A stretch of DNA of 64,000 nucleotides, taken from positions 5,084,001 to 5,148,000 of the forward strand of contig NC_042999.1 of the NCBI RefSeq assembly GCF_006345805.1, in the 5' to 3' direction. Below are positions 8,601 to 61,694 of the stretch, piece after piece (the first letter of the stretch is position 1; each line of letters opens with the position of its first letter). A program made the position numbers and the translations under genes. The notes below the pieces were generated by a model. It saw only the letters and a list, made by a program, of their open reading frames with translations, was not told where the DNA came from and made no database searches. The stretch comes from Octopus sinensis. Taxonomy: Eukaryota.

Positions 8601-11600
8601 CACTAGTGATATAAACAAGAGTGCTTACAAGCACCACAAAACTGAGAGATTCCCTCATAGTAAAGTATCACAGAATTCTGTGTTCTAAAAGTGCATCTAT
8701 TTTTAAGTGGGGATAAATATTACCTTTTGCCATTAATACCACTTCTGTTTCTAATAATTATTTGTTATCAAACCCATTTTTCAATGAAATTTATTTCTAT
8801 TATTAAAGACTGTATGATTAATTTGATATGGTATTTATAGTACTATCTTAGGAGATTCTGGTTATCATCAGTGCTTAAAGGGTAAGAAATATTTGAATAT
8901 AAATCAGTCAGAGATTTCTAACAAAAATGCAAGGAACTTTGAGACAACAGTTGTTTGAGGAACATTAACCCATTAGTACCCGTGGTCCTCTTTTAAGGAC
9001 CAGAAAGATAATCCATCATATTTCTGCAACACCTGTATTTTTCTGAGATACCTTTAGTTAGTCATCAAGACTGGAATGTCTTTCAAATATTGTAATAAAA
9101 AATTTTCTTTGTATATTTAGCATCAGATAAAGTTGTATAGAAAAAAATTTTTGGTAATAAATTAAATTTTTTAAATTTGGGCACCAATGGGTTAATCCCT
9201 TTTCTTATCTAACATTTGTTAACAGAATGAGAAATGAGAAAACGGACATAACGGTTTCATAAAGGAAACAAAAATACAAGAAACCTGATATTTACCTGGA
9301 ATTCTCCACTTTGGGTACCAAAAACATCACCATACAATGGCTTGCCTGATTCGTCAACAGGAGGTTTACCCCAACCGCCAGCATGATAACCGAATGAACA
9401 TGACTGTAATTAAAAAATAACAATTATAATAGTTTTATTCATAAACTGTTTCTCTGTAATGAGATTTACAAAGTATCTCAAAGCTGTTCAAAATCTTATA
9501 ATAAAACAGAGTTTGTGTGCGTGTGTGTGTGCGCACGCATGTTCCTTATGGATTCGAAAACTGGGTTGCCGATTTTGACGCATGAGGTTTCAAAAGATTC
9601 AGTAATGATGATTTTTTGCACAACTCCTTTTTACTACAAAATAACTTCAAAAACAAGGTCCGGTCACATAATTTTGAGGTCTTTAAGCTAAGGGAGGCAA
9701 CTCTCCCTGAACACTCTAAAATACATGGAGTCTTACCAGGGAATGAAACTTCAAAAATATACTGTCGACATTTTTAGTATTATTTATAGCAGATAATCTT
9801 TTAAGTGAAGTATGCTTGTCTGTGTTTTGTTTAGCCCAGAGTTGCCTCTGATACAGCAGACCCATCGCATAGTTTTTGGGGGTTTTTTCTTCCTGAAAAA
9901 CTGTAAATTTGTGTCTTTCTTTTGGTGAAAGCGTTTGTTTTAGGAGAGATTTGGTTGCTATTTGTAGTAGCTCAAGTTACGACAGAGACACTTCTGTGTG
10001 TGTGTGTTTTGTTGTGGTGAAAAAAACAACAACTTTTTCTCGGACAATTTTGCACAATAATGCACGATGATGATGAAAGATATAAGTTATAAATTTCCTC
10101 CTCTGTACATTGCGAATAAGTGATGTTCCTGTGTCTGATGACATCTATCTAAATTTTCTACATCAAGTTCCATGTTAGTGAAAAGAAGTCACAAATCCCC
10201 TCTTTGACTCACTGCAAATTTATTCTGTTACTTAGTCAGAATTGAAACTCCACACTGAATTACTATTATAGGTAAAATTTAGTATGTTAATTATATTATC
10301 TCATTGCCCCCCTAAAGCCTAACATATCTGACATGCCCAGGGCTCCCTGGGTGTGGGGAATACTGCCCATGTTGAAAACCACTTTGGTAAAGGAAGTAGG
10401 ATGTCAGTGAAATAGGAAATGTCGTATAATTAACAGGGAAGTATAATTAACAAGGAAGGTCGTCAAAAATTATGAAGTCTGTCAGTTGTAAAGTTTGTGA
10501 AAGTTTTATTTGTGTTGTTGTTGTTGTTGTTGATGAATAAAGAATTCTAGGAAGCTAATCCAGTCGTTCAGGTCTATCGAAGGACCATGAAGAAGGAAAA
10601 AAGAAGGTTGTGCATAAATCTCGAAAGGCAACAAAAAGTTTAATACATACTTCTGGGATTGGTGCATTCAAGCCAGGGATCTTGAGATTTGGGTAGGATG
10701 GAGGAGGTCCATATCGTTGCATAGCGATCAACCACGGCGGGGGAACTTTCTCTGAATTCTGAAATAGGTAAAAAAAAAAAAAAAAAAAAAAAAAAGATGA
10801 TGAAATACAATCTTCAGAACATTCAGTATGAGGGCATATGCACCTGAATATCTATTTCTTTATTACCCACAAGGGGCTAAACACAGAGGGGACAAACAAG
10901 GACAGACAAACGGATTAAGTCGATTACATCGACCCCAGTGCGTAACTGGTACTTAATTTATCGACCCCAAAAAGATGAAAAGCAAAGTCGACCTCGGCGG
11001 AATTTGAACTCAGAACGTAATGGCAGATGAAATATGGCTACGCATTTCGCTCGGCATGCTAACGTTTCTGCCACATCGCAGCCTTATGCACCTAAATATA
11101 GTACCAAAGAGCAACGGCTCAGAACGATAAAAGAATATGTGTGTGTGTGTGTGTTTCCCCTTGTGTTTGTCCTCTATCACTGCTTCACAACCAGTGTTGG
11201 TTTGTTTACATCCTCAAGTTCAGCAAAAGGAAACTGACAGGAGAAGCAACAAGTCTAAGAAAGCTTCCCAACCACATGCTTCTGAGTTCAATCCCTCTGC
11301 ATGGCACCTTGGGCAAGTGTCTTCTACTAAAGCCTTGGGCCAACCAAAGCCTGGTGAGTGGATTTGGTAGACGGAAACTGAAAGAAGCCTGTTGTCTATA
11401 TGTCCTTATATATAGGTACTGAAGGTCAGATGGTGGGGCATGCACAGTTGTTGATATATTCCTGGGTCCTCTCAGACGACCCATCGAGTAGAGTCCTGGT
11501 CAGTCCTCACCTCTGTGAGATACCTCCTCATCTGCAATGACCATGTGGAATGTAGTCAACAACACAAGCCATCAACCCAGCCAGATCCTCAGTGAGGAGA

Positions 11601-14600
11601 ACATAGTAACCAGGGTCTGACTTGGAAAATCTGCAGCCCTCTGGTCCTCCCTGTCCTGCTCTATACTTGTGAGACTTGGACACTTTCCTGGGCCCTTAGA
11701 TTACACCTGAACTCCTTAGCCACCAGGGTGCTTTGCAGGATTATGGGTTACCATCGGTTGGATTTTGTATCCAATCAACCACTCTGCTCAGGGATGTGCC
11801 TTGTTACTTGTATAATTTGGATGCATCAGCTCAAACTGCTTGGTCATGTGTGTGTGTGTCTGTCCCAATACCTATTTCTTTGCTACCCACAAGGGGCTAA
11901 ACACAGAGAAAACAAACAAGAACAGACAAACGGATTAAGTCGATTACATTGACCCCAGTGCGTAACTGGTACTTATTTAAACGACCCCGAAAGGATGAAA
12001 GGTAAAGTCGACCTTGGCGGAATTTGAACTCAGAACGTAGCGGCAGACGAAATACGGCTATGCATTTCGCCTGGCGTGCTAACGATTCTGCTAGCTCGCC
12101 ATCCCAATACCATCTGACAACTGGTGTTGATGTGTTTACATCCCCTTAACTTAGTGGTTTGGCAAAATGGCAAAAAAAAAGACAATAGAATGAATACAAA
12201 GCTTAAAAAAGAAAGAAAAGGGTTCAAGGTTTTGCACATTTCAATATAGTTTTCTAGTCATAAGGTGTGATGATGGGGTAGAGAGTATGATAAAGGTGAG
12301 GAAAAGGAGGAGAACAAGGAAGAAGATGGATAAGGAAAGAAATGATGAAGAAGAAAGCTTGAAGGAGCACTTAATCATTTGACCAACAAGCTGTAATTAA
12401 TGAGCCAACTTAATCGGAATTGAACTGCAGCTACACAAAAGCTAAAATAATACTCTTGATAATGGGAAAAGTTGGATTGTTACAAAGAGACTCTCAAAAA
12501 ATAGAAATTGGTTAATAAATATATGTAGGAAATTCATAAATAAATACATTAAAATAACTTACTGGACCAACTGGCATGCCTAGGGCTGTTCTCAGTTCAT
12601 CAGATAGATTACCAGGTTTTTTCTCTTTTAGACGTGTCTCAAATTCTTTACCCTGAAATATCAAGTCATAAGAAGACATATATAGATAGATATACACAAA
12701 CAGAATACAAAAATTATAAATAACATGAAGACAAGGTAAAACAAAAATAAACACAAAATGTCTATTAGTTTTACGCTCAGCAAAAATAAATGGAAAATCT
12801 TTTATGTCTTGAGCCAATGTTCTTGTAACAGAAAGAAGAGATGAGGAGAGAACAAAAAAAATGGAGGGAAAAAGAATGTATTTCAATGAGATGGTCACTA
12901 ATAGGAAAGTAGGAAAAGGTTACTTGAGGTGTGAGTAGCAAAGGGGACAACTGTGAGAGGTGAGTTGAGGTGTAGGTGGTTAAGGGAACATTTCTGAATC
13001 TGGCACATGTGTGTGTGTATGTGTGTGTCATACTTATATTTAAGTACACAACATAAAACTCCATATATTGCATTATACTCCAAAACGATGACTGAGAAGA
13101 AAATTTAAGTTATTTCACTGGAGACTCATCAGCAATAGAAGTCATAGAGTACAAGACAAGTGAATGTTTAAATTATAGATTTATAACATCATCATCATCG
13201 TTTAACGTCCACTTTCCATGCTAGCATGGGTTGGATGATTTGACTGAGGTCTGGCAAGCCAGATGGCTGCACCAGGCTCCAATCTTGATCTGGCAGAGTT
13301 TCTACAGCTGAATGCCCTTCCTAACGCCAACATCACCAAGAGTGTAGTGGGTGTTTTTACGTGCCACTGGCACAAGGGCCAGTCAGGCAGTACTGGCAAC
13401 GGCCACACTCAAATAGTGCTTTTTATGTGCCACCTGCACAGGAGCCAGTCCAGCGGCACTGGCAACAACCTCGGTCGAATGATAATATTCAATTCAAAGA
13501 TACTCGACTTCATTGTATTCTTTGCATGTTTGCATTTAGGCAGAGAAAATGTAAAACTTCAACTTCTGATTTGATAAAAAAATTTAAAAACGAAAAACAA
13601 AACATGAAAAAAAATGTCAGAATTTACCTCGTAATAAAGATCCCCATGAATGGTCAATTTGGGTTTGGTTTGCCATCGGAAGAAGGCATCATGGAGTTTT
13701 TGGTAATCAATATCAATCTTGCCAAGTTTAGGACGCACTTTCTCACGCATCTTTGCTTTCAAGGTTTTCTGGTCTTCCTGGAAAATACAATCCATAAAAA
13801 TGCTACATAAAACTGTAGAGAAGAATATAACCCCAAAAAGATGAACAGTAGCAGTCTTGTTACAGGTATAATTCTTTTCAATCTATTAATTTCACCTTTA
13901 ATATTCGTTTTAAATTTTGGCAGCACAGGGCCAGCAGCTTCATGGGTGGGGCTAAGTCAAATATTTCAAATTCCATTGCCCAAATCCCTTGCAAAGCCTT
14001 GGTCAGCCCTGGAGCTACAGTAAAAGACACTTGCTCAAGGTGCCTTACAATGGTATTGAACCCAAAACCACATTGTTGGGAAGTGAACATCTTAACCGTA
14101 CAACTATGCCTATTATCATCATTATTTAAAGTCCATTTTCCATTTTGGCATTGGTTGGATGGCTGGACAGGAGCCGGCAAGGTCAGGGCCCACACCAGGT
14201 TCCATAGTCTGTTTCTGGCTTGGTTTCTAATGCTCTTCCTTAATGCCAACCTCGTTAGAAAGTGTAATGGGTGCTTTTTATGTGGTACCCTCACCATGCT
14301 TTTTCATCATCATCATCATTTAACGTCTGCTTTCTATGCTAGCATGGGTTGGACGATTTGACTGAGGTCTGGTGAATCAGATGGCTACACCAGACTCCAA
14401 TCAGATCTGCCAGAGTTTCTACAGCTGGATGCCCGTCCTAACGCCAACCACTATGAGAATGTAGTGGGTGCTTTTACGAGCCACCAGCATGGGGGCCAGT
14501 CAGGCGGTACTGGCAACGACCTCACTCAAATGTTTTTTTATGTTCCACTGGCACAAGTGCCAGTAAGGTGACGCTGGTAACGATCATGCTCAAATGGTGT

Positions 14601-33634: not shown

Positions 33635-33697
<63 letters not shown>

Positions 33698-38184: not shown

Positions 38185-38597
38185 TTAGACACCCATAAAA
38201 TTATTAACCATCTTACTAGCAATAACTCTGAGCACCTCTTCAAACTCCACCTGTCTAACACCTGTGGACATGTTTACAAAGTCAGAAAACAAAACAGCTC
38301 CCATGACTTTCGGAAACATTTTTTCACGCTAAGAATTGCTGAAGCATGGAACAAACTGCTGGCATCAGTTGTTAGCTGTCGGATCACTGCATCCTTCAAA
38401 ACTTCCATGCTTCGTGAGATTTGCCAAAACTACACCTGACTTTCTCCCCTTCATACACACACAAGCATGTATCTGACTCATACACTGTTCACTTCCCAGA
38501 CATTTGTACATTACTGCATATGCTTTATATGCACTTTTGACAAGTTGTGGTGCACCTGAGCACTGTATACAATAATTTCATTATTATTATTATTATT
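38185..38597 (+). mobile_element. CR1/L2 LINE 3' fragment
   Basis: HKIINHLT...FFTLRIAEAWNKL; (ATT)n tail at ~38580-38597. Confidence 0.85.
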
Positions 38598-45624: not shown

Positions 45625-46430
45625 TATAATAATAATAAATAATAATAATTGTGTACAGTGCTCAGGTGCACTACAACTCATCTAAAGTGTATATATAATC
45701 AGGTGTAGTTTCGGCGGATTTCGGAAAGCATGAGGGCCTTAAAGGATGCAGTGTCATGGCAGTCAACAACTGACGCAGGCAGTTTATTCCATGCTTCAGC
45801 AACTCTGAGCGTGAAAAAATGTTTCCGAAAGTCATGGGAGCTGTGTTGTTTTCTGACTTTGTAGGCATGTCCACGTGTGTTAGACACATGGAGATCAAAA
45901 AGGTGTTCAGTGTTGTTGTTGGTGAGGTGGTTGATAACCTTGTGGGTGTTCACCAAGTCCGTCGCTAGACGCCGGAGCTTCAGTGAATCCATGCCCAGGG
46001 AAACAAGGCGCTCAGAATATGGTAGGTGTCTGATGGAGGGTATGCGTTTGGTTGCACGTCTCTGGACAGATTCCAGGAGGTCAATGTTCTGAGCAAGATA
46101 GGGGTTCCAAACTGATGATGCGAATTCCAAGTGTGGTCGTACCATAGCTGTATACAGTTTTAAATAGATGGCTGGAGAGCGGCTAACAAAAGTCTTGCTG
46201 AGTGATGCCAAGACACCCTCGGCCTTCTTGACAATTTTAGAGATATGCTTTGTCCAACGCAAATCACTGCTGACAGTGATGCCTAGGTCACGCTCGCAAG
46301 AGGATTTCTTGATATCAGTGTTGTGGAGGGAGTATGTGGACGCAGGGTTTTTTTCTCCCAAAATGCATGGTGGTACACTTGTCCACAGCCAGTTTCAGTT
46401 GCCAGTCTGTGATCCATTGCTGCATTATTG
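45625..46430 (-). mobile_element. 5'-truncated CR1/L2-clade LINE (RT C-terminus + 3' tail)
   Basis: ERDLGITVSSDL, YTAMVRPHLEFASSVWNP, LESVQRRATK, TRGH.YK, FFTLRVAEAWNKLP; (ATT)n tail. Confidence 0.9.
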
Positions 46431-47960: not shown

Positions 47961-48449
47961 GTGAGTCTATTGTCTGTGCATTTTTAGAGCTTACTGTATC
48001 TGCACATTTGCCACACACAAAGACTATTCTCTCCACGTGTGTGTGTGTATATATATATATATATCACGTGACCGACCAGACTATCAGATGTTGTTACACA
48101 TCACTGGTCACAATGCATTCGCATTGTTTTAGCCTTCGAATGACGCCACCCCAAAGTACCTCAAAGCTGATCAAAATCTTATAATAAAACAGAGTTTGTG
48201 TGCGTGTGTGTGTGTGCATGTTCCTTATGGATTCGAAAACTGGGTTGCCGATTTTGACGCATGAGGTTTCAAAAGATTCAGTATGGTGCAGGAGTGGCTG
48301 TGTGGTAAGTAGCTTGTTTACCAACCACATGGTTCCGGGTTCAGTCCCATTGCATGGCACCTTGGGCAAGTGTCTCCTACTACAGCCTCGGGCCAACCAA
48401 AGCCTTGTGTGTGGATTTTGTAGAAGGAAACTGAAAGAAGCCCGTCGTA

Positions 48450-48493
<44 letters not shown>

Positions 48494-49453
48494 TGTGTGT
48501 GTTTGTGTGTCTGCATTTGTCCCCCTAGCATTGCTTGACAACCGATGCTGGTGTGTTTATGTCCCCATTACTTAGCGGTTCGGCAAAAGAGACTGATAAA
48601 ATAAGTACTGGGCTCACAAAAGAATAAGTCCCGGGGTCGAGTTGCTCGATTAAAGGCGGTGCTCCAGCATGGCCGCAGTCAAATGACTGAAACAAGTAAA
48701 AGAGATGTTTTTTGCACAACTTTTTTTTACTACAAAATAACTTCAAAAACAAGGTCAGGCCGCATAATTTTGAGGTCTTTAGCTAAGGGAGGCAACTCTC
48801 CCTGAACACACTTTAAATTACAGGGAGTCTTACCAGGGAATGAAACTTCAAAAATATACTGTCAACTTTTTTAGTATTATTTATAGTAGATAATCTTTCA
48901 AGTGAAGTATGTTTGTCTGTGTTTTCTTTAGCCCAGATTTGCCTCTGATACAGCAGACCCATCGCATAGTTTTTGGGTTTTTTTCTTCCTGAAAAACTGT
49001 AAATTTGTGTCTTTCTTTTGATGAAAGCGTTTGTTTTAGGAGAGATTTGGCTGATGAGATCTACCTAAATTTTCTACATCAAGTTCCATGTTAGTGAAAA
49101 GAAGTCACAAATCCCCTCTTTGACTCACTGCAAATTTATTCTGTTACTCAGTCAGAAATTGAAACTCCACACTGAATTACTACTACAGGTAAAATCTAGT
49201 ATGTTAATTATATTATCTCACTGCCCCCTAAAGCCTAACATACCTGACATGCCCAGGGCTCCCTGGGTGTGGGGAATACTGCCCATGTTGAAAACCTTGT
49301 TGGTAAAGGAAGTAGAATGTCAGTGACACAGGAAATGTATAATTAACAAGGAAGGTCACCAAAAATTATGAAGTCTGTCAGTTGTAAAGTTTGTGAAAGA
49401 TTTATTTGTGTTGTTGTTGTTGTTGTTGTTCATGAATAAAGAATTCTAGGAAG

Positions 49454-52400
49454 CTAATGGTAGGATGGAGGAGGTCCATATCGTTGCATAGCAATAAACC
49501 ATGGCGGGCGAACTTTCTCTGAATTCTGAAATAGGAAGAAAAAAAAAGATGATGAAATACAATCTTCAGAACATTCAGTAGGTGGGCATCTGCACCTGAA
49601 TATAATACCAAAGAGCAATGGCTCAGAACGATAAAAGAATGTGTGTGTGTGTGTGTGTGTGTGTTTCCCCTTGTGTTTGTCTTCTATAACAGCTTCACAA
49701 CCAGTGTTGGTTTGTTTACATCCTCAAGTTCAGCAAAAGGAAACTGACAGGAGAAGAACCAGGTTTAAGGAGAGCTTCCCAAACACATGGTTCTGGCTTC
49801 AGTCCCACTGCATGGCACCTTGGGCAAGTGTCTTCTACTAAAGCCTTGGGCCGACCAAAGCCTTGTGAGTGGATTTGGGAGACAGAAACTGAAAGAATGT
49901 GTTGTCTATATGTCCTTATATATATATAAGTACTGAAGGTCAGATGGTGGGGCATGCACAGTTGTTGATATATTCCTGGGTCCTCTCAGACGACCCATCA
50001 AGTAGAGTCCCGGTCAGTCCTCCTCTTTACTACCCACAAGGGGCTAAACGCAGAGGGGGACAAACAAGGACAGACAAATGTATTAAGTCGATTATATCGA
50101 CCCCAGTGCGTAACTGGTACTTATTTAATCGACCCCAAAAGGATGAAAGGCAAAGTCGACCTTGATGGAATTTGAACTCAGAACGTAGCGGCAGACGAAA
50201 TATGGCTATGCATTTCGCATGGCGTGCTAACGATTCTGCTAGTTCGCCGTCCCAATACCATCTGACAACTGGTGTTGATGTGTTTACATCCCCTTAACTT
50301 AGTGGTTTGGCAAAATGGCAAAAAAAGAAGACAATAGAATGAATACAAAGCTTAAAAAAGAAAGAAAAAGGTTCAACGTTTTGCACATTTCAATATAGTT
50401 TTCTAGTTATAAGGTGTGATGATGAGGTAGAGAGTATGATAAAGGTGGGAGAAAGGAGGAGAACAAGGAAGAAGATGGATAAGGAAAGAAATGACGTAGA
50501 ATAAAGCTTGAAGGAGCACTTAATCATTTGACCAACAAGCTGTAATTAATGAGCCAACTTAATCAGAATTGAACTGCAGCTGCACAAAAGCTAAAATAAT
50601 ACTCTTGATAATGGGATAAGTTGGATTGTTACAAACAGACTCTTGAAAAATAGAAATTGGTTAATAAATATATGTAGGAATACATAAATGAATACATTAT
50701 AATAACTTACTGGACCGACTGGCATGCCCAGGGCTGTTCTCAGTTCATCAGATAGATCACCAGGTTTTGTCTCTACATCAAGTATCTCAATTTTTTTACT
50801 CTGAAATATCAAGTCATAAGAAGACATATATAGATAGATATACACACACACAGTACAAAAATTATAGATGACATGAAGACAAGGTAAAACAAAAATAAAC
50901 ACAAAATGTCTATTAGTTTTACGCTCAGTAAAAATAAATGGAAAATCTTTTGTGTTTCAAGCTAATGCTTTTGTAACAGAAAGAATAGATGAGGAGAGAA
51001 CAAAAAAATGGAGAGAAAAAGAATGTATTTCAATGAGATGGTCACTTAGAGGAAAGTAGGAAAAGGTTACTTGAGGTGTGAGTAGCAAAGGTGACAACTG
51101 TGAGAGGTGAGTTGAAGTGTAGGTGGTTAAGGGAACATTTCTGAATCTGGCACATGTGTGTGTGTGTGATGCTTATATTTAAGTACACAACATAAAACTC
51201 CATATATTGCATTACACTCCAAAACGATGACTGAGAAGAAAATTTGAGTTATTTCACTGGAGACTCATCAGCAATAGAAGTCATAGAGTACAAGACAAGT
51301 GAATGTTTAAATTATAGATTTATAACATCATCATCATCGTTTAATGTCCGCTTTCCATGCTGTCATGGGTTGAACAATTTGACTGAGGACTGGCGAACCA
51401 GATGGCTGCACCAGGCTCCAGTCTTGATTTGGCAGAGTTTCTACAGCTGGATGCCCTTCCTATTCTTATAAATGTTTCAGTGACTGTTATAATAATGAAA
51501 TTATTGTATACAGTGCTCAGGTGCACCACAACTTGTCAAAAAGTGCGAATAAAGCATATGCAGTAATGTACAAATGTCTGGGAAGTGAACAATGTATGAG
51601 TCAGATACATGCTTGCGTGTGTATGGAGGGGAGAAAATCAGGTGTAGTGTTGTCGAATCTCAGGAAGCATGGAAGTTTTGAAGGATGCAGTGCTCTGACA
51701 ACTAACAACTGATGCCGGCAGTTTGTTCCATGCTTCAGCAACTCTCAGCGTGAAAAAATGTTTCCTGAAGTCATGGGAGCTGTGCTGTTTTCTGACTTTG
51801 TAAACATGTCCACGGGTGTTAGACAGGTGGAGTTTGAAAAGGTGCTCAGAGTTATTGTTTGTAAGATGGTTAATAATGTAATGATTACATAAGATTAACC
51901 GTATACAATTTTTTACCCAGACGTCTGCTTTCCATGCTAGCATGGGTTGGACGATTTGACTGAGGTCTGGCAAACCAGATGGCTGCACCAGGCTCCAATC
52001 TTGATCTGGCAGAGTTTCTACAGCTGGATGCCCTTCCTAATGCCAACAACTCGCACAAGGGCCAGTCAGGCGGTACTGGCAACAACCTCGCTCGAATGAT
52101 AATATTCAATTCAAAGATACTCGACTTCATTGTATTCCTTTCATGTTTGCTTTTAGGCAGAGAAAATGTAAAACATTTAAAAAAAAAAAAAAGACTTCAA
52201 CTTCTGATTTGATGAAAAATTAAAAAACGTAAAACAAAAAACATGAAACAAAATGTCAGGCTTTACCTTGAAAAGGTTCAATAATGGATCGGTTGGCCTT
52301 CGGTAGAAAGCATCAAAAATCTCGTCAGGTGTAAGAGGCACATACCCAGGTATCTTTGCTTTCAAGGTTTTCTGATATTCCTGGAAAATACAATCCATGA

Positions 52401-55400
52401 AAATGCTACATAAAACTGTAGAGAAGAATATAATCCCCCAATAAAGTGAACAGTAACAGTCTCGTTACGGGTATAATTCTTTTCTATCTATTAATTTCAT
52501 CTTTAATACTGGTTTTAAATTTTGACACAGGGCCAGCAGCTTCACAGGTGGGGCTAAGTTGAATATTTCAAATTCCATTGCCCAAATCCCTTGCAAAGCC
52601 TTGGTCAGCCTGGAGCTACAGTAGAAGGCACTTGCTCAAGGTGCCTTGCAATGGCACTGAACCCAAAACCACATTGCTGGGAAGTGAACATCTTAACCGT
52701 ACAACTATGCCTATATATCATCATATAAAGTCCATTTTCCATTTTGGCATTGGTTGGATGGCTGGACAGGAGCTGGCAAGGTCAGGGACCACACCCGGTT
52801 CCATAGTCTGTTTTCAGCCTAGTTTCTAATGCTCTTCCTTAATGCCAACCTCGTTAAAAAGTGTACTGGGTGTTTTTTACATGGCACCATCACCAGTGCT
52901 TTTCATGAGACACCATGGCCACAGCTTTTTATGTGGTACGATCACCATTGCTTTTTCATCATCATCATCGTCGTTTAACATCTGCTTTCCATGCTAGCAT
53001 GGGTTGGACGATTTGACTGAGGACTGGTGAACCAGATGGCTGCACCAGGCTCCAATCTGATCTGGCAGAGATTCTACAGCTGGATGCCCTTCCTAACGCC
53101 AACCACTCTGAGAATGTAGTGGGTGCTTTTACGAGCCACCAGCACGGGGGCCAGTCAGGCAGTACTGGCAACGACCTCACTCAAATGTTTTTTTATGTTC
53201 CACCTGCACAAGTGCCAGTAAGGTGACGATGGTAACGATCATGCTCAAATGGTGCGTTTTATGTGCCACCGGCACAGAAGCCAGTTAGCCACTCTGGCAA
53301 CGATCACACTTGGATGGTGCTCTTAGTGCCCCATTAGCACGGATGCCTGCTCTTAGCGCCCCACTAGCACTATATGTAAATAAATTGTAGGCCTACCTTT
53401 TTTAAATATAATTTAAAAAGAGAAGAAGGTCAAACAGAAACATTCCTGGAGACAAACCACAACAAACAAATAAAATTGGTTTGCTAAGGGTACCATACAA
53501 GCAAGATCTTTGCCAGAGCAACAAGCTGGCCTCCGTGCCGATGGCACATAAAAAACACCATTCAAGCATGATCGTTACCTGCGTCGCCTTACTAGCACTT
53601 GTGCCGGTGGGCTGGCTCCTGTGCAGGTGGCACATAAAAAGCACCATTTGAGCCTGGCTGTTGCCAGTACTGCCTGACTGGCCCTTGTGCCAGTAGCATG
53701 TAAACGCACCCACTACACTTTCAGAGTGGTTGGCATTAGGAAGGGCATCCAGCTGTAGAAACTCTGCCAGATCAGATTGGAGCCTGGTGCAGCCATCTGG
53801 CTCGCCAGACCTCAGTCAAAATCGTCCAATCCATGCTAGCATGGAAAGCAGACACTAAACGATGATGATGATGATTGTAAGTGAGAATCACAGAAAATTA
53901 TCTAAGCAAAATGAGAAGAAATTTACATGCCAGTGCCATGTAGAAGCACCCATGCCTAATGCCACATGCAGTGCACCTGTACTGATGCTACATAAAAACA
54001 CCCAGTACATTGGTGTTAGGAAGAGCATCCAGCTGTAGAAACCATGCCAAAACAAGATGACTGGTGCCTGGTGCAGCCCTCCAGCTATTATCAAACTGTC
54101 CAACCCATACCAGCAAGGAAAGCGGACATTAAATGATGTTTCCTGAAATTCGCCAAAACTACACCTGATATCCCCCCACCTCCATACGCATGCACACATG
54201 TATATCATGACTCATACACTGTTCACTTTCCTGACTTTTGTACATAATTCTATAAACTATAAATGCAACTCTGTTGTACCTCTATTCACCATTCTTCATC
54301 ATCATCATCATCATCATCGTTTAGCATCCACTTTCCATGCTGGCATGGGTTGGACGGTGCAACTGGGGTCTGGGAAGCCAGAAGGCTGCACCAGGCCCAG
54401 TCTGATCTGGAAATGTTTCTACGGCTGGATGCCATTCCTAACACCAACCACTTTGTAAGTGTAGTGGGTGCTTTTTACGTGCCACCGGCACAGGTGCCAG
54501 ACGAGGCTGGCAAATGGCCATGGTCGGATGGTGCTTTTTACGTGCCACCGGCACGGAGGCCAGGCCAGGCTGGCAAACAGCCACGATCGGATGGTGTTTG
54601 TTACGTGCCACCAGCACGGAAGCCAGTCAGGGCGGCACTGGCAACGGCCACGTTCGGATGGTTCTCTTATGTGCCACCAGCACTGGTATCACAGCTACAA
54701 TTTCCATTCATGTTGATCGATTTTGATTTTTGAATTTTTGATTTTAAAATACTATTATCAGATAACGAATATGCAATATGCTCACAAGAATAAAAATATA
54801 TAAATTAACATACATCATCATCCGATGCTGGATCCAGGTCCACGTCTGATCTTGAAGATGACATTTGTTGCTTCTTCTTGTTCCTGTCGGAAGAAAATTA
54901 TTTAAACAAATTATATCACACTTGTCTGTAAAATAAATCCTTATCAATATGATGTTAAGTTTCAGCAGAAAATATTTATCTTTGGTTAATCTTTGGTTAA
55001 TCTGCAGTTGTTTAATAATATATTAATGCATCAATATGCATGGATAGCTAATATATTGATCCTGTAGATTGCTATATATTATGTATCTCAGGCCACCTTC
55101 GGTCATGGCTGACCATGGGTATCACGTCTGTCCATTTATTGTCCAGGTCGGGCCGCTCGGCTTGAGCAGCGCCTCCTGTGGCTATGGAGACCAATGCGAG
55201 AATGACAGTCTCGGTCGCATCTGTGTGTGGATTCTGGTCTGTCGATCCGTTACTTTGGGCTCACTTTTCTGCAGCTAACAGCCTCTCTTCACCGATCCGT
55301 AGCTGTTTGAGAAGTGTGCTTTTCCACCTGGTGCAGCCCACTGCCAGGTCCTCCCAGGAGTTGATGTCGATGTTGAGCACCTTCATGTCACTGCTGCACA

Positions 55401-55606
55401 CGTCCTTGCACCTCAGCTGCAGGCAGCCCTTGTTCCTCTGTCCTGCTCCGAGTTCTCCATAGAGAATGTCTTTTGAGATTCGGCTGTCCTCCATACAGCA
55501 AACATGGCCTAGCCAGTGTAGTCGACATTGTCTCAGCAAGGTGTACATGGAAGAGAGGCCAGCATGAGTTAGGACATCAGTGTTGGTCACCTTGTCCTGT
55601 ACAATG

Positions 55607-55663
<57 letters not shown>

Positions 55664-56666
55664 GGTCGGCCTTAGGAGGTGCAGGACCCAATTGGTAACA
55701 ATTTTGGTGGGCCTCTGGTTCCCAGTCAACTTGCACCAAGGTCTATAGAATCATAAAAATATAAAAATCCAGCCATTGAAACTATGCTACCATCCAGTGC
55801 TACGTAAAAGCACTCAGTCCACACTGTAAAGTGGTGGTGTTAGGAAGGACATCCAGCCACAAAAAACATGCCAAACCAGACAGGTATCAGACGTTGCCCC
55901 TGGCTTATTGGCCCCTGTCAAACCTTCCAACCGATGTCAGCATGGAAAATGGACGTTAAATGATGATGTTTGTGACCTCCTTTAATTGCTGAGAATCTAA
56001 GTAATTAGCAAACCTTCCTCCCCTGACACACAGCAGTGATCAGACTTCCATTCAATGCAGAGTGAACTCTGTTGCTTTGGCTGTTTATATAACACTAGCA
56101 AGCTGTGTATCACTACAATACAAGTACAGTTAACACTCACACAGTGTCTTGCTTGGAAATCTCACACTAAACGCTTCGCCTAATCTTCTATGCTTGGAAA
56201 TAAACTACTCCATAACATCTTCTCTGGAGACACCCAATGGAGCTTTCCAGTTTGGGAGAGCCCACAGTGGCTATGGACAATGCTCACCTCCTCAAACTGA
56301 AATTAAAATGATTCCCTGAGATTTATTAACTCTTAACATCTTGTTGAAGATTTTAAAGTTAAAAAAACCTCAATCCTGTAATGATTTTGTTCCAGAACAG
56401 AGATGTGGGGATGTTAATGCGTTGTTGCATGAGAAGTTGACTGAACTGCACAAAATAGAAGTCTTTTACAATGAATCATTTTTTTATGACAATACAAATA
56501 CAAAATATAACATACATGAATTATTAAAAAGCACTGGTGCTGGTTCCACATAAAAAGTACAGAAAGAGGTAAATCAATTAAGGAACCCTAACTCATGCAC
56601 TGAACCAAAAACACACAGGAGGAAATAAAGCTTTTCAAGCTGTATTTACCTTGAACGAGATCTCAT
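49454..56666 (-). CDS. Putative SF3B2-derived mini-gene, 5 coding exons, 120 aa (alternative: unprocessed pseudogene)
   Basis: Exons 56666-56650, 54883-54814, 52380-52267, 50800-50711, 49525-49454; all splice sites intact, frame continuous: MRSRSRNKKKQQMSSSRSDVDLDPASDDD-EYQKTLKAKIPGYVPLTPDEIFDAFYRRPTDPLLNLFK-SKKIEILDVETKPGDLSDELRTALGMPVGP-NSEKVRPPWFIAMQRYGPPPSYH*; AATAAA at 49406-49401. Confidence 0.55.
51480..51880 (-). mobile_element. CR1/L2 LINE 3' fragment inserted in the duplicate only
   Basis: NHLTNNNSEHLFKLHLSNTRGHVYKVRK...WNKLPASV; absent at the parent site (~13.3 kb). Confidence 0.82.
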
Positions 56667-57486
56667 ATTTGTATTTCAAATGTGATCCTAGTTGACCAAA
56701 ATGGACAATTCTGAAAGGTCAAGAAAAAAAAATTTTAATCAATAACGCTTTAGTTTTAGAAAGATTTTAGTTTCATGTACCATACCTTTTCCTCTAATTC
56801 CTTTGTGCTCTGAATTCTATTCTAATCTAATCTAATCAGAATCAACTTAGCAGTTAATCTTTTCAGGTTCAATAAAATAAACACTTATATCGAAATGGGC
56901 AATCACATGGCTCCAGGTTCAATCCCACTGCGTGGCACCTTGAGCAAGTATCTTCTACTATAGCGTTGGGTTGACCAAAGTCTTGTGAGTGATTTTGGTA
57001 AACGAAAACAGAACCAAGCCCATCACACACAAGTGTGTCCCCTATTACCGCTCGACAACCGGCGTTGGTGCGTTTACGTCCCATAACTTAGCTGTTCGGC
57101 AAAAGTCACTAACAGAATAAGTACCAGGCTTAAGTACTGGGATCGATTCATTCGACTAAAAATTCTTCGAGGTAGTACCCCAGCATGGCCACGGCCTAAT
57201 GGCGGAAGCAAGTAAAAGATAGAAAGATGGAATGAGGAAAGCAAGGCAATTACCGCAAAACAATATTCTCCAGAATGCGAAGATGGCGAAAGAGAATGAG
57301 AAGAAAGGAGAAAATATTGTCAGAGGTGGAACTACATAACACCATTATTTCTGCTGGTTTTTAAGCATAATTAGATCTTGAAATCAGAAAGTTTGTTGTT
57401 TATGTAATGTTGCTTATAATTAGACAATTCTAAGTTATCTAAATAAACATCTATCTCCTTGCAAGACACGTTTTTAAGATGACATT

Positions 57487-58002
57487 TCTTTTGTTCATGC
57501 TTGTGTCTATGTTAGTCATAGCTTTCCCTTCCTCCCTCTCCGGTACCGGAGCATTGGTGGAGGGAAGAGGAGGGAAATCTTCAATGACGTCGAAAGTGAC
57601 GTCCTGGTTTTCTTTCTCCTTTCGAACAGTGCACGTGCTTTCAGCTTCGGAAGGAGGATCTTTGTTGCCTTTTATGGAGAGAAGTGGGCGGTTTGGAAAC
57701 GTTTTTGACAATGTGTGTGTTTGCGGAGGGTGTGGTGTTGGGAGAAAGGAACAGCTGACTGCTCGCTTCATAGCCATGTTTGTTGAAATGTATGTGTATA
57801 ATTTTCAAAATGTTCAAATTTCAAAACGTAATTTTACCCCCAATGGGGTAAAATTTTGCCGAGCCAACTAGCTCCGCTAGAAGTTAGTTGGCTTGGCCAC
57901 ACAAATATCAAAAAATGTAAAAACTTTTAGAGAAATTTCCAATCAAATTGGCACAAAACTTACTGAGCCACTTTACACACGTAAGTCGTCTTGGAAAGAA
58001 AG
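57487..58002 (-). mobile_element. 5' end (5'UTR + ORF1 N-terminus) of a second, diverged Tx1 copy, 3'-truncated against the SF3B2 duplicate
   Basis: MAMKRAVSCS...PPSEAESTCTVRKE...DVTFDVIEDFPPLPST aligns with MALKRAAGSS...PPSETESTRTVRRE...DVAFDVTLDFPPLPST. Confidence 0.88.
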
Positions 58003-58294
58003 AATAATAATAATACTAATTTATTCTTTTTATTGGCCACAAGGGCTGACACACATGATTGGTAAACATAAAGGGACAAAACAGGATGAAAGGTTACAAA
58101 GGGTTTTGTCCGTTTTTGAAAAATCCGTGTAAACAACAGTGTAACAATGAAAATATTTAACAACGAAAAACTCCCAAAAGGGGGAGGCGTTTCGAAAGGT
58201 TCCTGGTGGAAAAAAACCCATAAAAGCCAACGGGAGCCTAGTCAAAAAAGTGGGGTAGAGGGCCCCTTTTCTCCTTTTATATTACCTTTTTGAA

Positions 58295-61200
58295 TCACAG
58301 GCGAAACCTGAGAACTGGTCCACAATTCACCCACCTTTCATAAAACTTGCTATCGGACAGCACTCTCCTCTCTAACCTCATCTTCCTTTTCAAGTGAAAC
58401 TTGAAAAAGTTGATGAGGCCTTGACCAAAGCGGAAAGTGTCTGACTTTAGCCCTTTCAAACGGGTCCACCATACCACCTTTCGCCACAGCCACTAGGCAC
58501 AAGAAAACGGCCTCGCCCTCCTTCTTAAAGGAGGTCGGCGGGGCAATCTTCACTATGGATTCGGCCGATAGTCGGATCCGTCCTACACATGACAGTAGCT
58601 GTTCGACATAAACCCATAGTTCAGCAATACTCGGGCACTGGACGAGTGCATGCAGAACGGTTTCGTCGTCCTGGCAACACCTCGGGCAGGCCCGGCTGAC
58701 GGCACTTCCGTGCCGGTAGAGTTTATCCCGAACAGGCAGAGCCCCTCGGTAGCACTGCCAGGCGAGCGACCTCTGGAAATTATCCATCGGCCCTGGCCCG
58801 AAAGTCCTTCCAAACAGACCGCTCAGTTCGTTATCTTCAACGCCTAGAGTTTCCCCGAGAACGTCGTCGCATTTTTTCTCCACTAACCCTCTATAGAACG
58901 CTAGAGTGGAGCTGAAACCGATCGCATTGCCCGCTTGGCGGAGGGCGGAGAGAGCCTGACGGCACTCGAGGTCCCAAGTGCCCTTTCTCGGTCTACGCTT
59001 GATCCAGGTCTGCAGCTCTGTCAAAGAGACGAGCTGCGGAAAGTCGCGTCTGACAAAAGACGACCACACCTGTTCACCGTCAAGGAAACGCTTGAGATGT
59101 CGCAGCCTGAGCGCATCAGCAACCACGGCATTCCAAGGCCTCCGTTCAGCGGTCGTTGACAGCAGATGGATCGCCTGACCAGTGGCACCTGACCCTTCCA
59201 CAAAAAGTCGAAGAGCAGGCGTACCAGCTTGGCCAACCAGCGGTCGGGACAAGTAGATGATGGATGCGATGTACGCATTCGCCACCTCCGCTCGACCTTT
59301 CAGGGACAGCTTCCTCTCAGCCCATTTCTGGGTGAGATGTGCCACCCTGCTCATCACCTCTTCCCAGTTTTTATCCACCTGGAGGTCCGGACCGAACCAG
59401 ACCCTGAGCAGTTTAACGGGTCCGTCTGTCCAGCGCCCTACGACGCTGTTGGACGGCATGGGCTTGCCTCTCCAGGTGCCCAGTTGCAAGCCCACAGACT
59501 TTTCCGCGTTAATCTTTGCCCCTGTCACCGCTTCGTACTGGTTTAGCGTCTCGCCAATCAGGCCAATGTGCCTGTGGCTCGACACCACCACGGTGACGTC
59601 GTCGGCATAAGCAGACACGCTGTTTCCGCCTCCTAGATCGCGCGGGATACCCCTCAAAGCCTCCAACTTGCGCAGTAATGGCTCGAGAGTCAAAATGTAC
59701 AAAAGGGAGGAGAGAGGGCATCCTTGGCGGACCGAACGCGAGATGTCGAACGGTTCCGAAAGGTGACCGTTCACCCGTATCACCGAGCAGATGTTGCTGT
59801 ATAGAGCAGCTATCCACCCGCGGAAAACTGGACCGAAACCGGCTGCCTTGAGGACAGCCGCCAGGTACCGATGGTCGACCCTATCGAAGGCTTTACTCTG
59901 ATCCAAGTTGATCAAAGCCCCACCCGCGCCAGCGTCGTTACCCACCCTCTCTATGATGTAGTGCATGAGATGGAGGTTGTCGTGTATCGACCTGGTCGGC
60001 ACGGCGCATGTCTGCGTCTTGCCGACCAGCTTGTCCACGACAAGCGCCAATCTCTTGGCTAGCACCTTGGCCAAAATTTTCAACTCTGCATTGAGCAGAG
60101 TGATGGGCCGGAAATTCCCTATAACGTCCCCCTTGTTTGGGTCCTTCTTTAGCAAAGCCACCACCCCTCGACAGACAAAAGCAGGAATTCTCCCGTTTTG
60201 CTGCCAGTTGCAGTAGACGTTTGCCAACAGGTCCGCAAACAAGTCTGGCATTGAAAAGTAAAGCTCGTAGGGCAGACCATCCAAACCCGGCGATCTACCT
60301 CTCGTGCAACTCTTCATCGCTTCCTGTACTTCCCAGGCAGATATCGGTCCTTCGCAGCACTCTGCCTCACTGTCCGAGAGTTGCGGTAGGCCGTCCAGGT
60401 ACACACCGAAGTCTGCACCGTTGTCCGTTCAACCGCTCGTCCCAAACAGTTGAGCAAAGTGCCGCTGAAGCACCGTACACATCTGCTTCGGTTCGGTAAC
60501 CTCGCGCCCGTTCTGGTCCACCAAAGACCAAATGGTTGCTCTGTTGCCTCGCTTCGCCTCCGCCACGCGGGCCCATCGAGCGGCTCTAGTCCCCTCCCCG
60601 CTTAGCGAACGTGCCTTAGCTCTGACAACGCAACCTTCGTGTTTGGCGTCGAAGTGTTGGTCGAGGGCCAACCTTGCCGCCAACACGTCGGTCGCGATGC
60701 CAGTCTCAAGAGCCTCGTCTAGTTTCTTAACTAAATCCCGCTCTCTCTTCCTACGTTCAATAGCTAGAGTCTTACTATACCTAATCGACTCTACTCTAAT
60801 TGCTCTCTTGAGGGCAAACCACCAGTTGTTGTTGATGATTGTCCCCGTGAGCGCCCGCTTAACTAGTAAACTAATCCGGTCTCTGTAAGCTTTGCACGCC
60901 GTTAACGACGCGTTCAGCTTCCAGTAGCCGGGTCTCTGTCTATGTAGCCTATCTAAGTCGACCGTACAGATCACTAATTTGTGCTCCGTATATTCGACTA
61001 GGTGGAATTGTGGACACCCTACGCTGTCCTTATCCGCTGGCCTACAAAACACTCTATCTAAGTACGATCTAGACGAGCCGATGCGGTTTGTCCAAGTCCA
61101 CATTGGCACATTCGGGTTGTCTAGTCGAAACCTGTCAGACAGCTGAAAGCGGCCGAGTAGATTGGCGAGGCTCTTGCACCCTCCCCCTCTCCTATCAGAC

Positions 61201-61656
61201 GCTCCCCTGCCCACCCGATCGAAACGTTCGTCTAAGACAGCGTTCCAATCCCCAACTAGCACTAGAGTGCGTGACGTTCCCAGGAAAACTTCCAGACGTT
61301 TGAAATAATCCGACTGCCCTGCTCCTGTTGAAGCGTAGGCAGCCAGCAGTCTGAAAGCACCGCCGTCACTACCGTCCACGTCGAGGACCACCAACTTACC
61401 TTCCGGATCCAAGAAGACTGTCCTTATTTTCAGGTCCAGGCCCTTCCGAAACAACACCGCAGTACCACCACCGCCCGCTCCCGGCCGACACGGAGATAGA
61501 AATATCTCGTATCCGCCGAAAAGAGCTGCGAGTTCCTGCGGGTCGGAGAGCCTGGTTTCACTGATGGCTGCTACATCCACATCATGAAACCTCAGGTCGT
61601 TTAACAGGTGACCTGAGGCCTCTCACATTCAAGCAACCGATTCTAAGATTTGCCAT
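58295..61656 (-). pseudogene. Tx1/L1 ORF2 (endonuclease-reverse transcriptase), disrupted
   Basis: MANLRIGCLNVRGL start at 61656; AAISETR, LVGDWNAVLD, SYLDRVF, EHKLV; RT RPITLLN, DQSKAFDRVDH, QGCPLS, YADD; CPRC..ETVLH..C. Frameshift ~61610, in-frame TGA 60431-60429, compensating frameshifts ~59250/59115, frameshift ~58480. Confidence 0.92.
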
Positions 61657-61694
61657 GTTTCAAAAGTTAGGAAAAAAAAAGGAGAAAAAAGGCT

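What the first reader, a model, noticed from the sequence alone, without database searches (positions are those of the whole stretch)
49454..50764. The retained, conserved part is the PSP module: possible SF3B4/RBM7 decoy
Seen: from KPG onward the duplicate reads KPGDLSDELRTALGMPVGP-NSEKVRPPWFIAMQRYGPPPSY. Over these 40 codons I count 4 synonymous changes (CTA>CTG, GTT>GTC, CCG>CCA, ATC>ATT) and 3 replacements (N>D, P>R, L>F), a synonymous excess relative to the neutral ~1:3 expectation (small numbers). The new stop falls right after GPPPSY. Established: this proline-rich PSP segment of SF3B2/Cus1 binds the RRM of SF3B4/Hsh49, and the homologous ZCCHC8 segment binds RBM7 in the NEXT complex. 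Inference: a basic NLS-like N-terminus (MRSRSRNKKK) plus an isolated PSP module could act as a microProtein-style competitor or adaptor tuning U2 snRNP or NEXT.
Basis: partly seen in the sequence, partly recalled or inferred. Interest (0 to 1): 0.8.

Follow-up and report, generated by a model that had tools for sequence, protein, structure and literature searches.

The report
Truncated octopus SF3B2 duplicate keeping its PSP motif
An octopus genome carries a cut-down extra copy of the splicing-factor gene SF3B2 that still encodes a 120-residue protein holding the short motif that grips SF3B4 or RBM7, and its evolution looks selected rather than decaying, though what it does is untested.

Summary
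The window is Octopus sinensis chromosome CM016861.1. It is a DNA-level partial duplicate (window 48152-57486, minus strand) of the complete SF3B2 gene downstream (~34.4-4.1 kb).

That 4:3 count carries no weight alone. PSP nucleotide divergence (5.7%) equals the neutral paralog divergence (4.9%), and three replacements is what a neutral copy predicts.

Stronger evidence appeared elsewhere:
- The 40 codons just upstream are hyper-diverged (28/40 residues, pN 0.37 vs pS 0.10). The change stops at the exon-intron junctions, and two deletions there are in frame.
- The O. vulgaris orthologue differs at 1 of 363 exon bases against 2.6-2.7% in introns (P about 0.002-0.008).
- The retained residues match human SF3B2 605-645. 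Published work shows residues 603-647 bind SF3B4 RRM1 and RBM7.

Against function:
- The one O. vulgaris difference is a stop codon (R56*) upstream of the PSP.
- No transcript evidence was found.
- The parent's likely promoter was not copied.

Verdict: probably a young, selected microprotein-like paralogue. The decoy mechanism is plausible but unproven.

The parts
48152..57486 (-). Partial DNA-level duplicate of SF3B2. It is made of collinear blocks 90-95% identical to parent 9469-35322, and it lacks parent ~32592-18220 and ~17860-14745.
   Evidence: Self-BLAST of the window. Breakpoints were read directly. The same structure is present in O. vulgaris.
56650..56666 (-). Exon 1: ATG AGA TCT CGT TCA AG (MRSRS-R), followed by donor gtaaat. 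The parental counterpart at 34362-34346 reads MKSRS-R.
   Evidence: In-frame stops lie upstream of the ATG in both copies.
54814..54883 (-). Exon 2: (R)NKKKQQMSSSRSDVDLDPASDDD, ending in phase 0. It differs from the parent (32901-32832) at one base, giving E>D.
52267..52380 (-). Exon 3, 38 codons: EYQKTLKAKIPGYVPLTPDEIFDAFYRRPTDPLLNLFK. It is a remnant of the DUF382 C-terminus with in-frame deletions of 21 and 15 nt, and it is hyper-diverged from codon 10 on. A new GG|GTATGT donor follows 52346 and is the one used in the O. vulgaris model. Base 52302 is C here and T in O. vulgaris, which gives R56*.
50768..50800 (-). First 11 codons of exon 4: SKKIEILDVET against parental GKEFETRLKEK. This is the 3' end of the hyper-diverged segment, and the divergence starts at the first exon base.
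50711..50767 (-). PSP part 1: KPGDLSDELRTALGMPVGP, equal to human SF3B2 605-623. It contains the SF3B4-RRM1-binding helix (human 607-616).
   Evidence: PMC5275738
49454..49525 (-). Exon 5, PSP part 2: NSEKVRPPWFIAMQRYGPPPSY (human 624-645), then His and TAG (stop at 49456-49454). The 132-bp deletion junction lies at 49459/49458.
49401..49406 (-). AATAAA 47 nt after the stop, a possible poly(A) signal. It is inherited from the parental intron and also present in O. vulgaris.
   Evidence: No transcript evidence.
10651..10758 (-). Parental SF3B2 exon: NSEKVPPPWLIAMQRYGPPPSYPNLKIPGLNAPIPE, the full C-terminal part of the PSP.
12563..12652 (-). Parental SF3B2 exon: GKEFETRLKEKKPGNLSDELRTALGMPVGP.
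13628..13777 (-). Parental SF3B2 exon: EDQKTLKAKMREKVRPKLGKIDIDYQKLHDAFFRWQTKPKLTIHGDLYYE, the DUF382 C-terminus.
57482..58203 (-). A LINE 5'-end-like fragment, 75% identical to 63278-63999, lying directly against the 5' boundary of the duplicated block in the same orientation as the gene. It is a candidate substitute promoter, by inference only.

Best explanation
Shown. The locus is a young paralogue of SF3B2. It predates the O. sinensis / O. vulgaris split and is roughly twice as old as that split. It arose by partial genomic duplication and was then pared down by deletions to a five-exon, 120-codon ORF, annotated as XP_029633543.1. The ORF has three parts:
- the parental N-terminal 29 residues;
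- a 49-residue linker derived from the end of DUF382, of which 40 residues were rewritten in a burst of replacement changes before the species split;
- 41 residues of the PSP domain that correspond to the experimentally defined SF3B4-RRM1 / RBM7-RRM binding fragment of human SF3B2.
Since the species split the exons have been almost frozen while the introns diverged 2.6-2.7%.

Inferred. The ORF has been maintained by selection as a protein. The protein most likely docks through its PSP helices on the helical back face of SF3B4 RRM1, and possibly RBM7. It lacks DUF382 and the C-terminal half that tie SF3B2 into SF3b, so it would compete with full-length SF3B2, or with ZCCHC8, for those RRMs. This would be a microprotein or SRGAP2C-style truncated-paralogue antagonist or modulator. 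The rewritten linker lost basic residues (parental 52-residue stretch net +4, duplicate's 40-residue stretch net -2), which fits shedding of parental contacts. Transcription may depend on the LINE 5' fragment next to the duplication boundary, because the parent's CpG-rich upstream patch was not copied.
For: Identity and annotation:
- The 120-aa ORF is an exact match to XP_029633543.1, and locus L002 equals window 56666-49454.
- The O. vulgaris orthologue CAI9718980.1 lies at a collinear locus.

ORF integrity in O. sinensis:
- All eight splice sites of the 120-codon model are canonical.
- Three deletions left the frame open.
- P(no stop | 37 random substitutions in the linker) = 0.23.

Linker:
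- 37/120 nt and 28/40 residues are changed, against 4.9% neutral paralog divergence (P=4e-19).
- pN is 0.365 against pS 0.098 (Fisher P=0.006). Third codon positions are spared (P=0.007).
- The divergence stops at the exon-intron junctions.
- The same segment is near-invariant in canonical SF3B2 across animals, so simple relaxation of constraint cannot explain the contrast with the PSP.

Constraint between species:
- Exons differ at 1/363 bases against 182/6729 in introns (permutation P=0.007).
- Against 150-nt flanks the test gives P=0.008.
- Against unique parent-derived non-exon sequence (2.58%) it gives P about 0.002.

Binding module:
- Pfam PSP matches profile positions 1-36 of 46, E=7.8e-16, with no DUF382 hit.
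- The module corresponds to human residues 605-645.
- Invariant PSP residues are kept.
- The AF2 model places confident helices at 85-90 and 105-113.
- Published binding data for fragments 598-631 and 603-647 are in PMC5275738 and PMC5146272.
Against: - O. vulgaris carries CGA>TGA at codon 56 of this isoform. Its annotated 93-aa model rescues the frame only by pairing a new internal donor with an AG two bases inside exon 4. That looks like an ORF-maximising prediction.
- No transcript-derived copy of either protein exists in the collection. Both clusters have a single member, from the genome annotation.
- The parent's CpG-enriched upstream patch (35.8-36.4 kb) lies outside the duplicated block, which ends at 35322.
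- PSP divergence from the parent is neutral-like, and for the PSP alone the between-species test is marginal.
- The yeast minimal stable binding fragment extends about 25 residues beyond the duplicate's stop (PMC5435868), and the 598-631 peptide binds weakly, Kd about 50 uM (PMC5275738).
- P103R and L107F are unique to the duplicate among the 12 sequences aligned here. One snake SF3B2-like protein has S where the others have P.
- Only two closely related species could be compared.
Confidence: 0.5

Rival explanations
1. It is a dead or dying gene relic. On this view the partial duplicate has no function, its open frame and low exon divergence are luck over a short time span, and it is annotated only because gene predictors favour ORFs with homology to SF3B2.
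For: - There is a nonsense codon in O. vulgaris, and a contrived splice pair is needed to rescue its model.
- No transcript-derived proteins were found.
- The promoter-like CpG patch was not duplicated.
- PSP replacements equal the neutral expectation.
- The O. vulgaris annotation is an EVM consensus that includes ab initio and protein-alignment evidence (PMC10700109).
Against: - A neutral relic should show exon divergence equal to intron divergence. The observed value is 1/363 against about 9 expected (P 0.002-0.008).
- It should not show pN about four times pS and more than seven times the neutral rate in one coding segment bounded by splice junctions.
- Two of two exonic deletions are in frame.
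Confidence: 0.3
2. The locus is selected, but not as a PSP decoy. There are three versions of this idea:
- the rewritten linker carries a new interaction, and the PSP is a passenger;
- the transcript acts at the RNA level;
- exons 1-2 serve as alternative first exons spliced to the downstream parental gene on the same strand.
For: - The strongest selection signal is in the linker, not the PSP.
- Between-species conservation covers all exons equally.
- The duplicate lies upstream of the parent on the same strand, and exon 2 ends in phase 0 as in the parent.
Against: - The end of the ORF coincides with the end of the defined RRM-binding fragment (PMC5146272).
- The PSP contact residues are intact.
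- Alternative-first-exon use would not conserve exons 3-5.
Confidence: 0.15
3. The linker 'burst' is a mutational accident rather than adaptive evolution. Candidates are a complex or templated event, or conversion from another diverged copy. Alternatively, the duplication is much older than it looks, and gene conversion with the parent has homogenised everything except the linker.
For: - About 34 replacements accumulated during a period in which neutral sites gained about 1-2.4%. That implies an implausibly high omega of about 20-40.
- Parent-to-duplicate gene conversion does seem to occur: block 55881-54746 shows 4 O. sinensis-specific against 22 O. vulgaris-specific changes.
- pS in the linker rests on only 2.5 changes.
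Against: - A DNA-level cluster should not respect exon-intron junctions on both sides of a 1.5-kb intron.
- It should not spare third codon positions (P=0.007) or stay stop-free.
- The substitution spectrum is mixed and rich in transversions, not A>G editing-like.
- This rival concerns only the linker's history and is compatible with either function or decay.
Confidence: 0.2

Closest known systems
SF3B2 / SAP145 / SF3b145 (yeast Cus1), the parental spliceosomal SF3b subunit
   Same: The duplicate derives from it with introns retained. It shares the N-terminal 29 residues (2 changes) and PSP residues equal to human 605-645 (3 changes).
   Different: It lacks the Pro-rich N-terminal region, has no detectable DUF381-type match (no DUF382 hit), lacks the last 10 PSP profile positions and lacks the whole C-terminal half. 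It is 120 aa against 895 aa for human SF3B2, so it cannot act as an SF3b scaffold.
ZCCHC8 proline-rich segment (ZCCHC8Pro 285-324) and SAP145Pro 603-647, short PSP peptides that bind the helical face of the RBM7 / SF3B4 RRMs (PMC5146272; PMC5435868)
   Same: The length and boundaries are almost the same as the retained module. The Trp/Phe, Met and terminal Tyr/Trp positions and the two helices are all kept.
   Different: Here the module is a free-standing natural gene product rather than a laboratory fragment. It carries the P103R and L107F changes, and its binding has not been measured.
Truncated paralogues from incomplete segmental duplication that antagonise the parent, such as human SRGAP2C (from my own knowledge, not checked here)
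   Same: It is an incomplete, recent, lineage-specific genomic duplication that keeps the 5' end and an interaction module. Antagonism would be by partner sequestration.
   Different: It was further reduced by internal deletions. It shows a burst of replacement in the linker. No expression or functional data exist.
MicroProteins such as plant LITTLE ZIPPER or animal Id proteins (from my own knowledge; concept found in the hits)
   Same: It is a small, single-interaction-domain protein derived from a multidomain ancestor.
   Different: The defining dominant-negative activity is untested. I know of no precedent among spliceosomal SF3b components.

Membership tests
Pfam PSP domain (PF04046) | A match to the family HMM above the gathering score | tested here: met
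   58 bits against a cut-off of 19.6, E=7.8e-16. Residues 79-119 match profile positions 1-36 of 46, so the domain is C-terminally truncated.
Functional SF3B2/Cus1 orthologue | A DUF382 (PF04037) domain upstream of the PSP | tested here: not met
   no DUF382 hit in P0145 or P0001. The parental exon 3 matches DUF382 positions 75-127.
Functional SF3B2/Cus1 orthologue | A complete PSP plus the conserved C-terminal half (SCSFGYHAGGWGKPP... to the C-terminus) | tested here: not met
   The duplication ends at parent 9469, before the next exon, and only one copy of the downstream exons exists in the window.
SAP145Pro / ZCCHC8Pro-type RRM-binding peptide | Covers the experimentally sufficient fragment (human SF3B2 603-647, or at least 598-631) | tested here: met
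   residues 79-119 equal human 605-645. The fragment definitions come from PMC5146272 and PMC5275738. Only human 646-647 of the fragment are missing outright. The positions equivalent to 603-604 are present, with K604 replaced by T.
SAP145Pro / ZCCHC8Pro-type RRM-binding peptide | Reported contact residues conserved (L609, E612, I615, W632, M636, Y645 equivalents) | tested here: met
   All are kept except I615, which is T in both the parent and the duplicate. L633 (equivalent to the ZCCHC8 I310 outer layer) is F, and P629 is R.
SAP145Pro / ZCCHC8Pro-type RRM-binding peptide | Physical binding to SF3B4 RRM1 or the RBM7 RRM | not testable with these tools
   No complex prediction or assay was available. 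The yeast minimal stable fragment is longer (Cus1 290-350; PMC5435868).
MicroProtein / truncated-paralogue antagonist | A small protein with a single interaction module, derived from a larger multidomain ancestor | tested here: met
   120 aa, 13.8 kDa, with PSP the only detectable domain.
MicroProtein / truncated-paralogue antagonist | Is expressed and forms non-productive complexes with the ancestor's partners | not testable with these tools
   No transcript-derived protein is in the collection, and no RNA-seq data were accessible.
Pseudogene | A disrupted reading frame | tested here: inconclusive
   The frame is intact in O. sinensis. The same isoform has R56* in O. vulgaris, where an alternative 93-aa frame is open.
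Pseudogene | Neutral evolution, with exon divergence equal to intron divergence and dN equal to dS | tested here: not met
   (exons 1/363 against 2.6-2.7%). (linker pN 0.365 against pS 0.098 and 4.9% neutral).
Processed retrocopy | Introns absent, with a poly(A) tract at the 3' junction | tested here: not met
   Introns are retained and collinear with the parent. There is no poly(A) at the 48152 junction.

The most novel reading that the evidence does not exclude
Octopus sinensis and O. vulgaris evolved, within the last few million years, a dedicated microprotein that regulates SF3B4 or RBM7. A partial SF3B2 duplicate was trimmed to the exact RRM-binding PSP peptide. Its DUF382-derived linker was adaptively rewritten to shed the parental contacts. 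It was possibly placed under a LINE-derived promoter. The product would tune U2 snRNP assembly or the hand-over between NEXT and SF3b, and would be the first natural free-standing PSP decoy.
Probability: 0.25. Interest if true: 0.75.

Novelty: new variant of a known kind. Interest (0 to 1): 0.55.

Why it matters
If the protein is made and binds SF3B4 or RBM7, it would be a natural, lineage-specific competitor for a core U2 snRNP interface. That interface is otherwise near-invariant across the animal SF3B2 sequences compared here and conserved from yeast to human in the literature. It would also be a clean case of a new gene born by partial duplication, with the birth steps still readable: deletions that keep the frame, a burst of replacements confined to one coding segment, and then stasis. 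The case gives a directly testable handle on how SF3B2-SF3B4 and SF3B2-RBM7-ZCCHC8 competition affects splicing and intron decay, in animals noted for unusual RNA processing. If the protein is not made, the locus remains a useful warning. An ORF annotated in two genomes and carrying a conserved-looking domain can still be a relic, and a 4:3 substitution count says nothing either way.

Tried and rejected
Orthologue searches:
- The homology tool appears to return only proteins up to about 1.75 times the query length. The first search therefore could not have seen the 120-aa model, and full-length octopus SF3B2 was never retrieved.
- As a result I could not fetch the O. vulgaris parental locus for a positive-control exon/intron comparison, nor any third Octopus species.

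Look-ups that led nowhere:
It worked through the cluster look-up id.
- An exact look-up of the 55-aa product truncated at the O. vulgaris stop was not in the collection.
- A literature search for the accession found nothing, and a search for DUF382 function found nothing useful.
- Foldseek on the low-confidence model only re-found SF3B2 chains, with poor TM scores. Its ZCCHC8 hits were not significant.

Explanations rejected:
- Assembly or haplotig artefact. The two copies differ by 5% plus large indels, and the structure is present in two independent assemblies of two species.
- Retrocopy. Introns are retained and there is no poly(A) at the junction.
- LINE 3'-transduction origin. The LINE is absent upstream of the parent, and the rest of a second LINE is not downstream of the duplicate.
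- RNA-editing-derived changes. The substitution spectrum is mixed, not A>G.

One correction: forced global alignment of 200-nt flanks gave spurious 22-27% divergence where homology breaks off. I replaced it with local collinear blocks.
Full report
WHAT IS THERE

The window is eukaryotic DNA (41% GC). Its minus strand carries a complete SF3B2 gene. Exons run from an ATG at 34362 down to about 4139. They were located with tblastn, using a human SF3B2 sequence recalled from memory purely as a guide, and read directly.

Upstream on the same strand there is a second, partial copy. Self-BLAST shows collinear blocks, 90-95% identical, linking duplicate 57486-48152 to parent 35322-9469. Parent ~32592-18220 and ~17860-14745 are missing from the duplicate.

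The duplicate keeps five exons with canonical splice sites:
- e1 56666-56650
- e2 54883-54814
- e3 52380-52267
- e4 50800-50711
- e5 49525-49454

Joined, they give a 120-codon ORF. An exact look-up shows this is RefSeq XP_029633543.1, "splicing factor 3B subunit 2-like [Octopus sinensis]". The encoding locus on CM016861.1 is base-for-base the window. The feature is therefore already annotated, but I found no publication on it.

CHECKING THE OBSERVATION

The peptide, the seven listed substitutions and their synonymous or replacement status are all correct.

The stop comes from a 132-bp deletion that removes the last 14 codons of the parental exon, its donor and 84 bp of intron. The frame then reads His-TAG.

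- The Fisher test gives P=0.074.
- PSP nucleotide divergence is 7/123 = 5.7%, against 295/6012 = 4.9% in non-exonic collinear sequence (P=0.67).
- The parent is itself under strong constraint, so a fully neutral duplicate lineage predicts about 2.3 replacements. Three were seen.
- The 40-codon window was started exactly where an extremely diverged stretch ends.

WHAT THE TOOLS ADDED: THE LINKER

The 40 aligned codons upstream of KPG (e3 codons 10-38 plus e4 codons 1-11) differ from the parent at 37 of 120 bases and 28 of 40 residues:
- pN is 0.365 against pS 0.098 (Fisher P=0.006).
- Against neutral divergence the excess has P=4e-19.
- By codon position the hits are 13, 18 and 6. The chance of so few third-position hits is 0.007.
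- There are also two deletions, of 21 and 15 nt, and both are in frame.
- The divergence begins and ends at the exon-intron junctions, while the adjoining intron sequence shows only ordinary divergence of about 5-8%.
- The parental 52-residue stretch has net charge +4, against -2 for the duplicate's 40 residues.

In canonical SF3B2 from molluscs to vertebrates this segment is as invariant as the PSP. Relaxed constraint would therefore have affected both segments equally. The contrast of 28/40 against 3/41 residues (P=3e-9) needs either positive selection on the linker or an exon-confined mutational process.

WHAT THE TOOLS ADDED: A SECOND SPECIES

The best database hit to the PSP exons was CAI9718980.1 of O. 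vulgaris, 93 aa. Its locus (L001) is collinear with the window but only about 96-97% identical including indels.

Substitution divergence between the two species:
- 2.7% in introns (182/6729).
- 2.58% in unique, parent-derived non-exonic sequence (108/4190).
- 1 of 363 bases in the five exons.

Tests of the exon deficit:
- Permutation of equally sized non-exonic segments gives P=0.007.
- Fisher against 150-nt flanks gives P=0.008.
- Fisher against unique background gives P about 0.002.
- For the PSP alone the result is 0/129, P about 0.04-0.08, which is not decisive.

The single difference is CGA>TGA at a CpG, codon 56 of the 120-codon isoform, upstream of the PSP. The O. vulgaris model avoids it by using a GG|GTATGT donor, itself created by duplicate-specific substitutions, together with an AG two bases inside exon 4. 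That annotation is an EVM consensus of transcripts, protein alignments and ab initio predictions (PMC10700109). I cannot tell which kind of evidence supports this particular model.

TIMING

A three-way comparison of non-exonic sites used the O. sinensis parent, the O. sinensis duplicate and the O. vulgaris duplicate:
- 3.63% shared changes.
- 1.15% O. sinensis-specific changes.
- 1.32% O. vulgaris-specific changes.

The duplication is thus about twice as old as the species split. That split has been estimated at 2.5 My (cited in PMC10700109).

One block, 55881-54746, is strongly asymmetric, with 4 O. sinensis-specific against 22 O. vulgaris-specific changes. This points to a post-split gene conversion from parent to duplicate in O. 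sinensis, so the age may be underestimated.

Even so, about 34 replacements accumulated in an interval worth 1-2.4% neutral change. That implies an omega of about 20-40, which is extraordinary, and I regard it as not fully explained.

THE MODULE

- Pfam finds only PSP, matching profile positions 1-36 of 46, with no DUF382.
- Residues 79-119 align to human SF3B2 605-645.
- SF3b145 598-631 binds SF3b49 RRM1 through a helix at 607-616. The contacts are L609, E612 and I615, and Kd is about 50 uM (PMC5275738).
- SAP145Pro 603-647 pulls down SAP49 RRM1 and also the RBM7 RRM, in a mutually exclusive way with ZCCHC8. ZCCHC8Pro binds RBM7 with Kd 28 nM (PMC5146272).
- In yeast the smallest stable Hsh49-binding fragment is Cus1 290-350. 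There W312 equals human W632 and Y325 equals human Y645 (PMC5435868).

The duplicate therefore ends at the last residue of the human or ZCCHC8-defined fragment, but about 25 residues short of the yeast-defined one.

The contact residues are kept. P103R and L107F are unique to the duplicate among the 12 aligned sequences, although one snake SF3B2-like protein has S where the others have P. L107 corresponds to the outer-layer I310 of ZCCHC8.

AF2 gives a low-confidence chain overall (mean pLDDT 62). The PSP region scores 77-82 and has helices at 85-90 and 105-113.

EXPRESSION AND PROMOTER

- Both protein clusters have a single member, from the genome annotation. No transcript-assembly copy was found.
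- The duplicated block stops 960 bp upstream of the parental ATG, at 35322. The only CpG-enriched patch upstream of the parent (35.8-36.4 kb, observed/expected 1.6-1.8 against a window median of 0.40) lies outside it.
- Directly against the duplicate's 5' boundary, in the same orientation, lies a 720-bp fragment resembling the 5' end of the full-length LINE just upstream. This fragment could supply a promoter, but that is inference only.
- An AATAAA lies 47 nt after the stop and is conserved in O. vulgaris.

VERDICT

Set against this are a premature stop in one species, no expression evidence and no binding data.

My probabilities:
- About 0.5 that this is a selected microprotein-like paralogue acting through its PSP.
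- About 0.3 that it is a relic.
- The remainder goes to other modes of function.

The gene is annotated but uncharacterised. As a kind of thing it is a new variant of the truncated-paralogue or microprotein theme.

Noticed in passing
window 58350-63715 (minus strand): An apparently full-length non-LTR retrotransposon sits immediately upstream of the duplicate. It has ORF1 (490 aa, with a CCHC knuckle; 63167-61695), an endonuclease ORF (383 aa; 61580-60429) and a reverse-transcriptase ORF (684 aa; 60404-58350). It is GC-rich (56-58%) with CpG observed/expected about 1.0-1.25 in a window whose median is 0.40. It is also present at the same place in O. vulgaris.
   Followed up: partly
window 57482-58203 vs 63278-63999: A second, diverged copy of the LINE's 5' end (75% nt identity, about 50% aa identity) follows the LINE's 3' end. 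It lies directly against the 5' boundary of the SF3B2 duplication in the sense orientation. No remainder of this second LINE lies downstream of the duplicate.
   Followed up: partly
window 35800-36400: This is the only CpG-enriched patch upstream of the parental SF3B2 (observed/expected 1.6-1.8). It is probably the parental promoter or 5' UTR region, and it lies outside the duplicated block, which ends at 35322.
   Followed up: no
window 55881-54746 (parent 33932-32764): Three-way comparison shows 4 O. sinensis-specific against 22 O. vulgaris-specific changes and low shared divergence (1.6%). This is the signature of a post-speciation gene conversion from the parent onto the duplicate in O. 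sinensis.
   Followed up: partly
window 52340-52352 (minus strand): Three duplicate-specific substitutions (GAG AAA GTG to GGG TAT GTG) create a consensus-like 5' splice site, GG|GTATGT, inside exon 3. GTATGT donors are used elsewhere in this gene. With the normal exon-4 acceptor this donor would shift the frame.
   Followed up: partly
window 51463-52052: An insertion of about 590 bp in the duplicate's intron 3 is absent from the parental intron. It is related, in inverted orientation, to 38194-38587, and is a transposable-element copy.
   Followed up: no
window 33292-33801 and 45699-46361, 7280-7618: Reverse-transcriptase C-terminal fragments (LINE remnants) lie in parental intron 1 (copied into the duplicate), in the 13-kb spacer and in a 3' intron. 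No other gene-like ORF was seen in the spacer 35.3-48.2 kb.
   Followed up: no
L001 11253-12701 vs window 55389-54678: Intron 1 of the O. vulgaris duplicate is about 740 bp longer than in O. sinensis. The extra sequence is a tandemly repeated segment.
   Followed up: no
protein P0037 (Pantherophis guttatus 'SF3B2-like', 362 aa) in alignment A1: A snake SF3B2-like protein carries scattered unusual replacements in otherwise invariant positions (for example R>Q, R>W, P>S, D>Y). It may be another independent SF3B2-derived copy.
   Followed up: no
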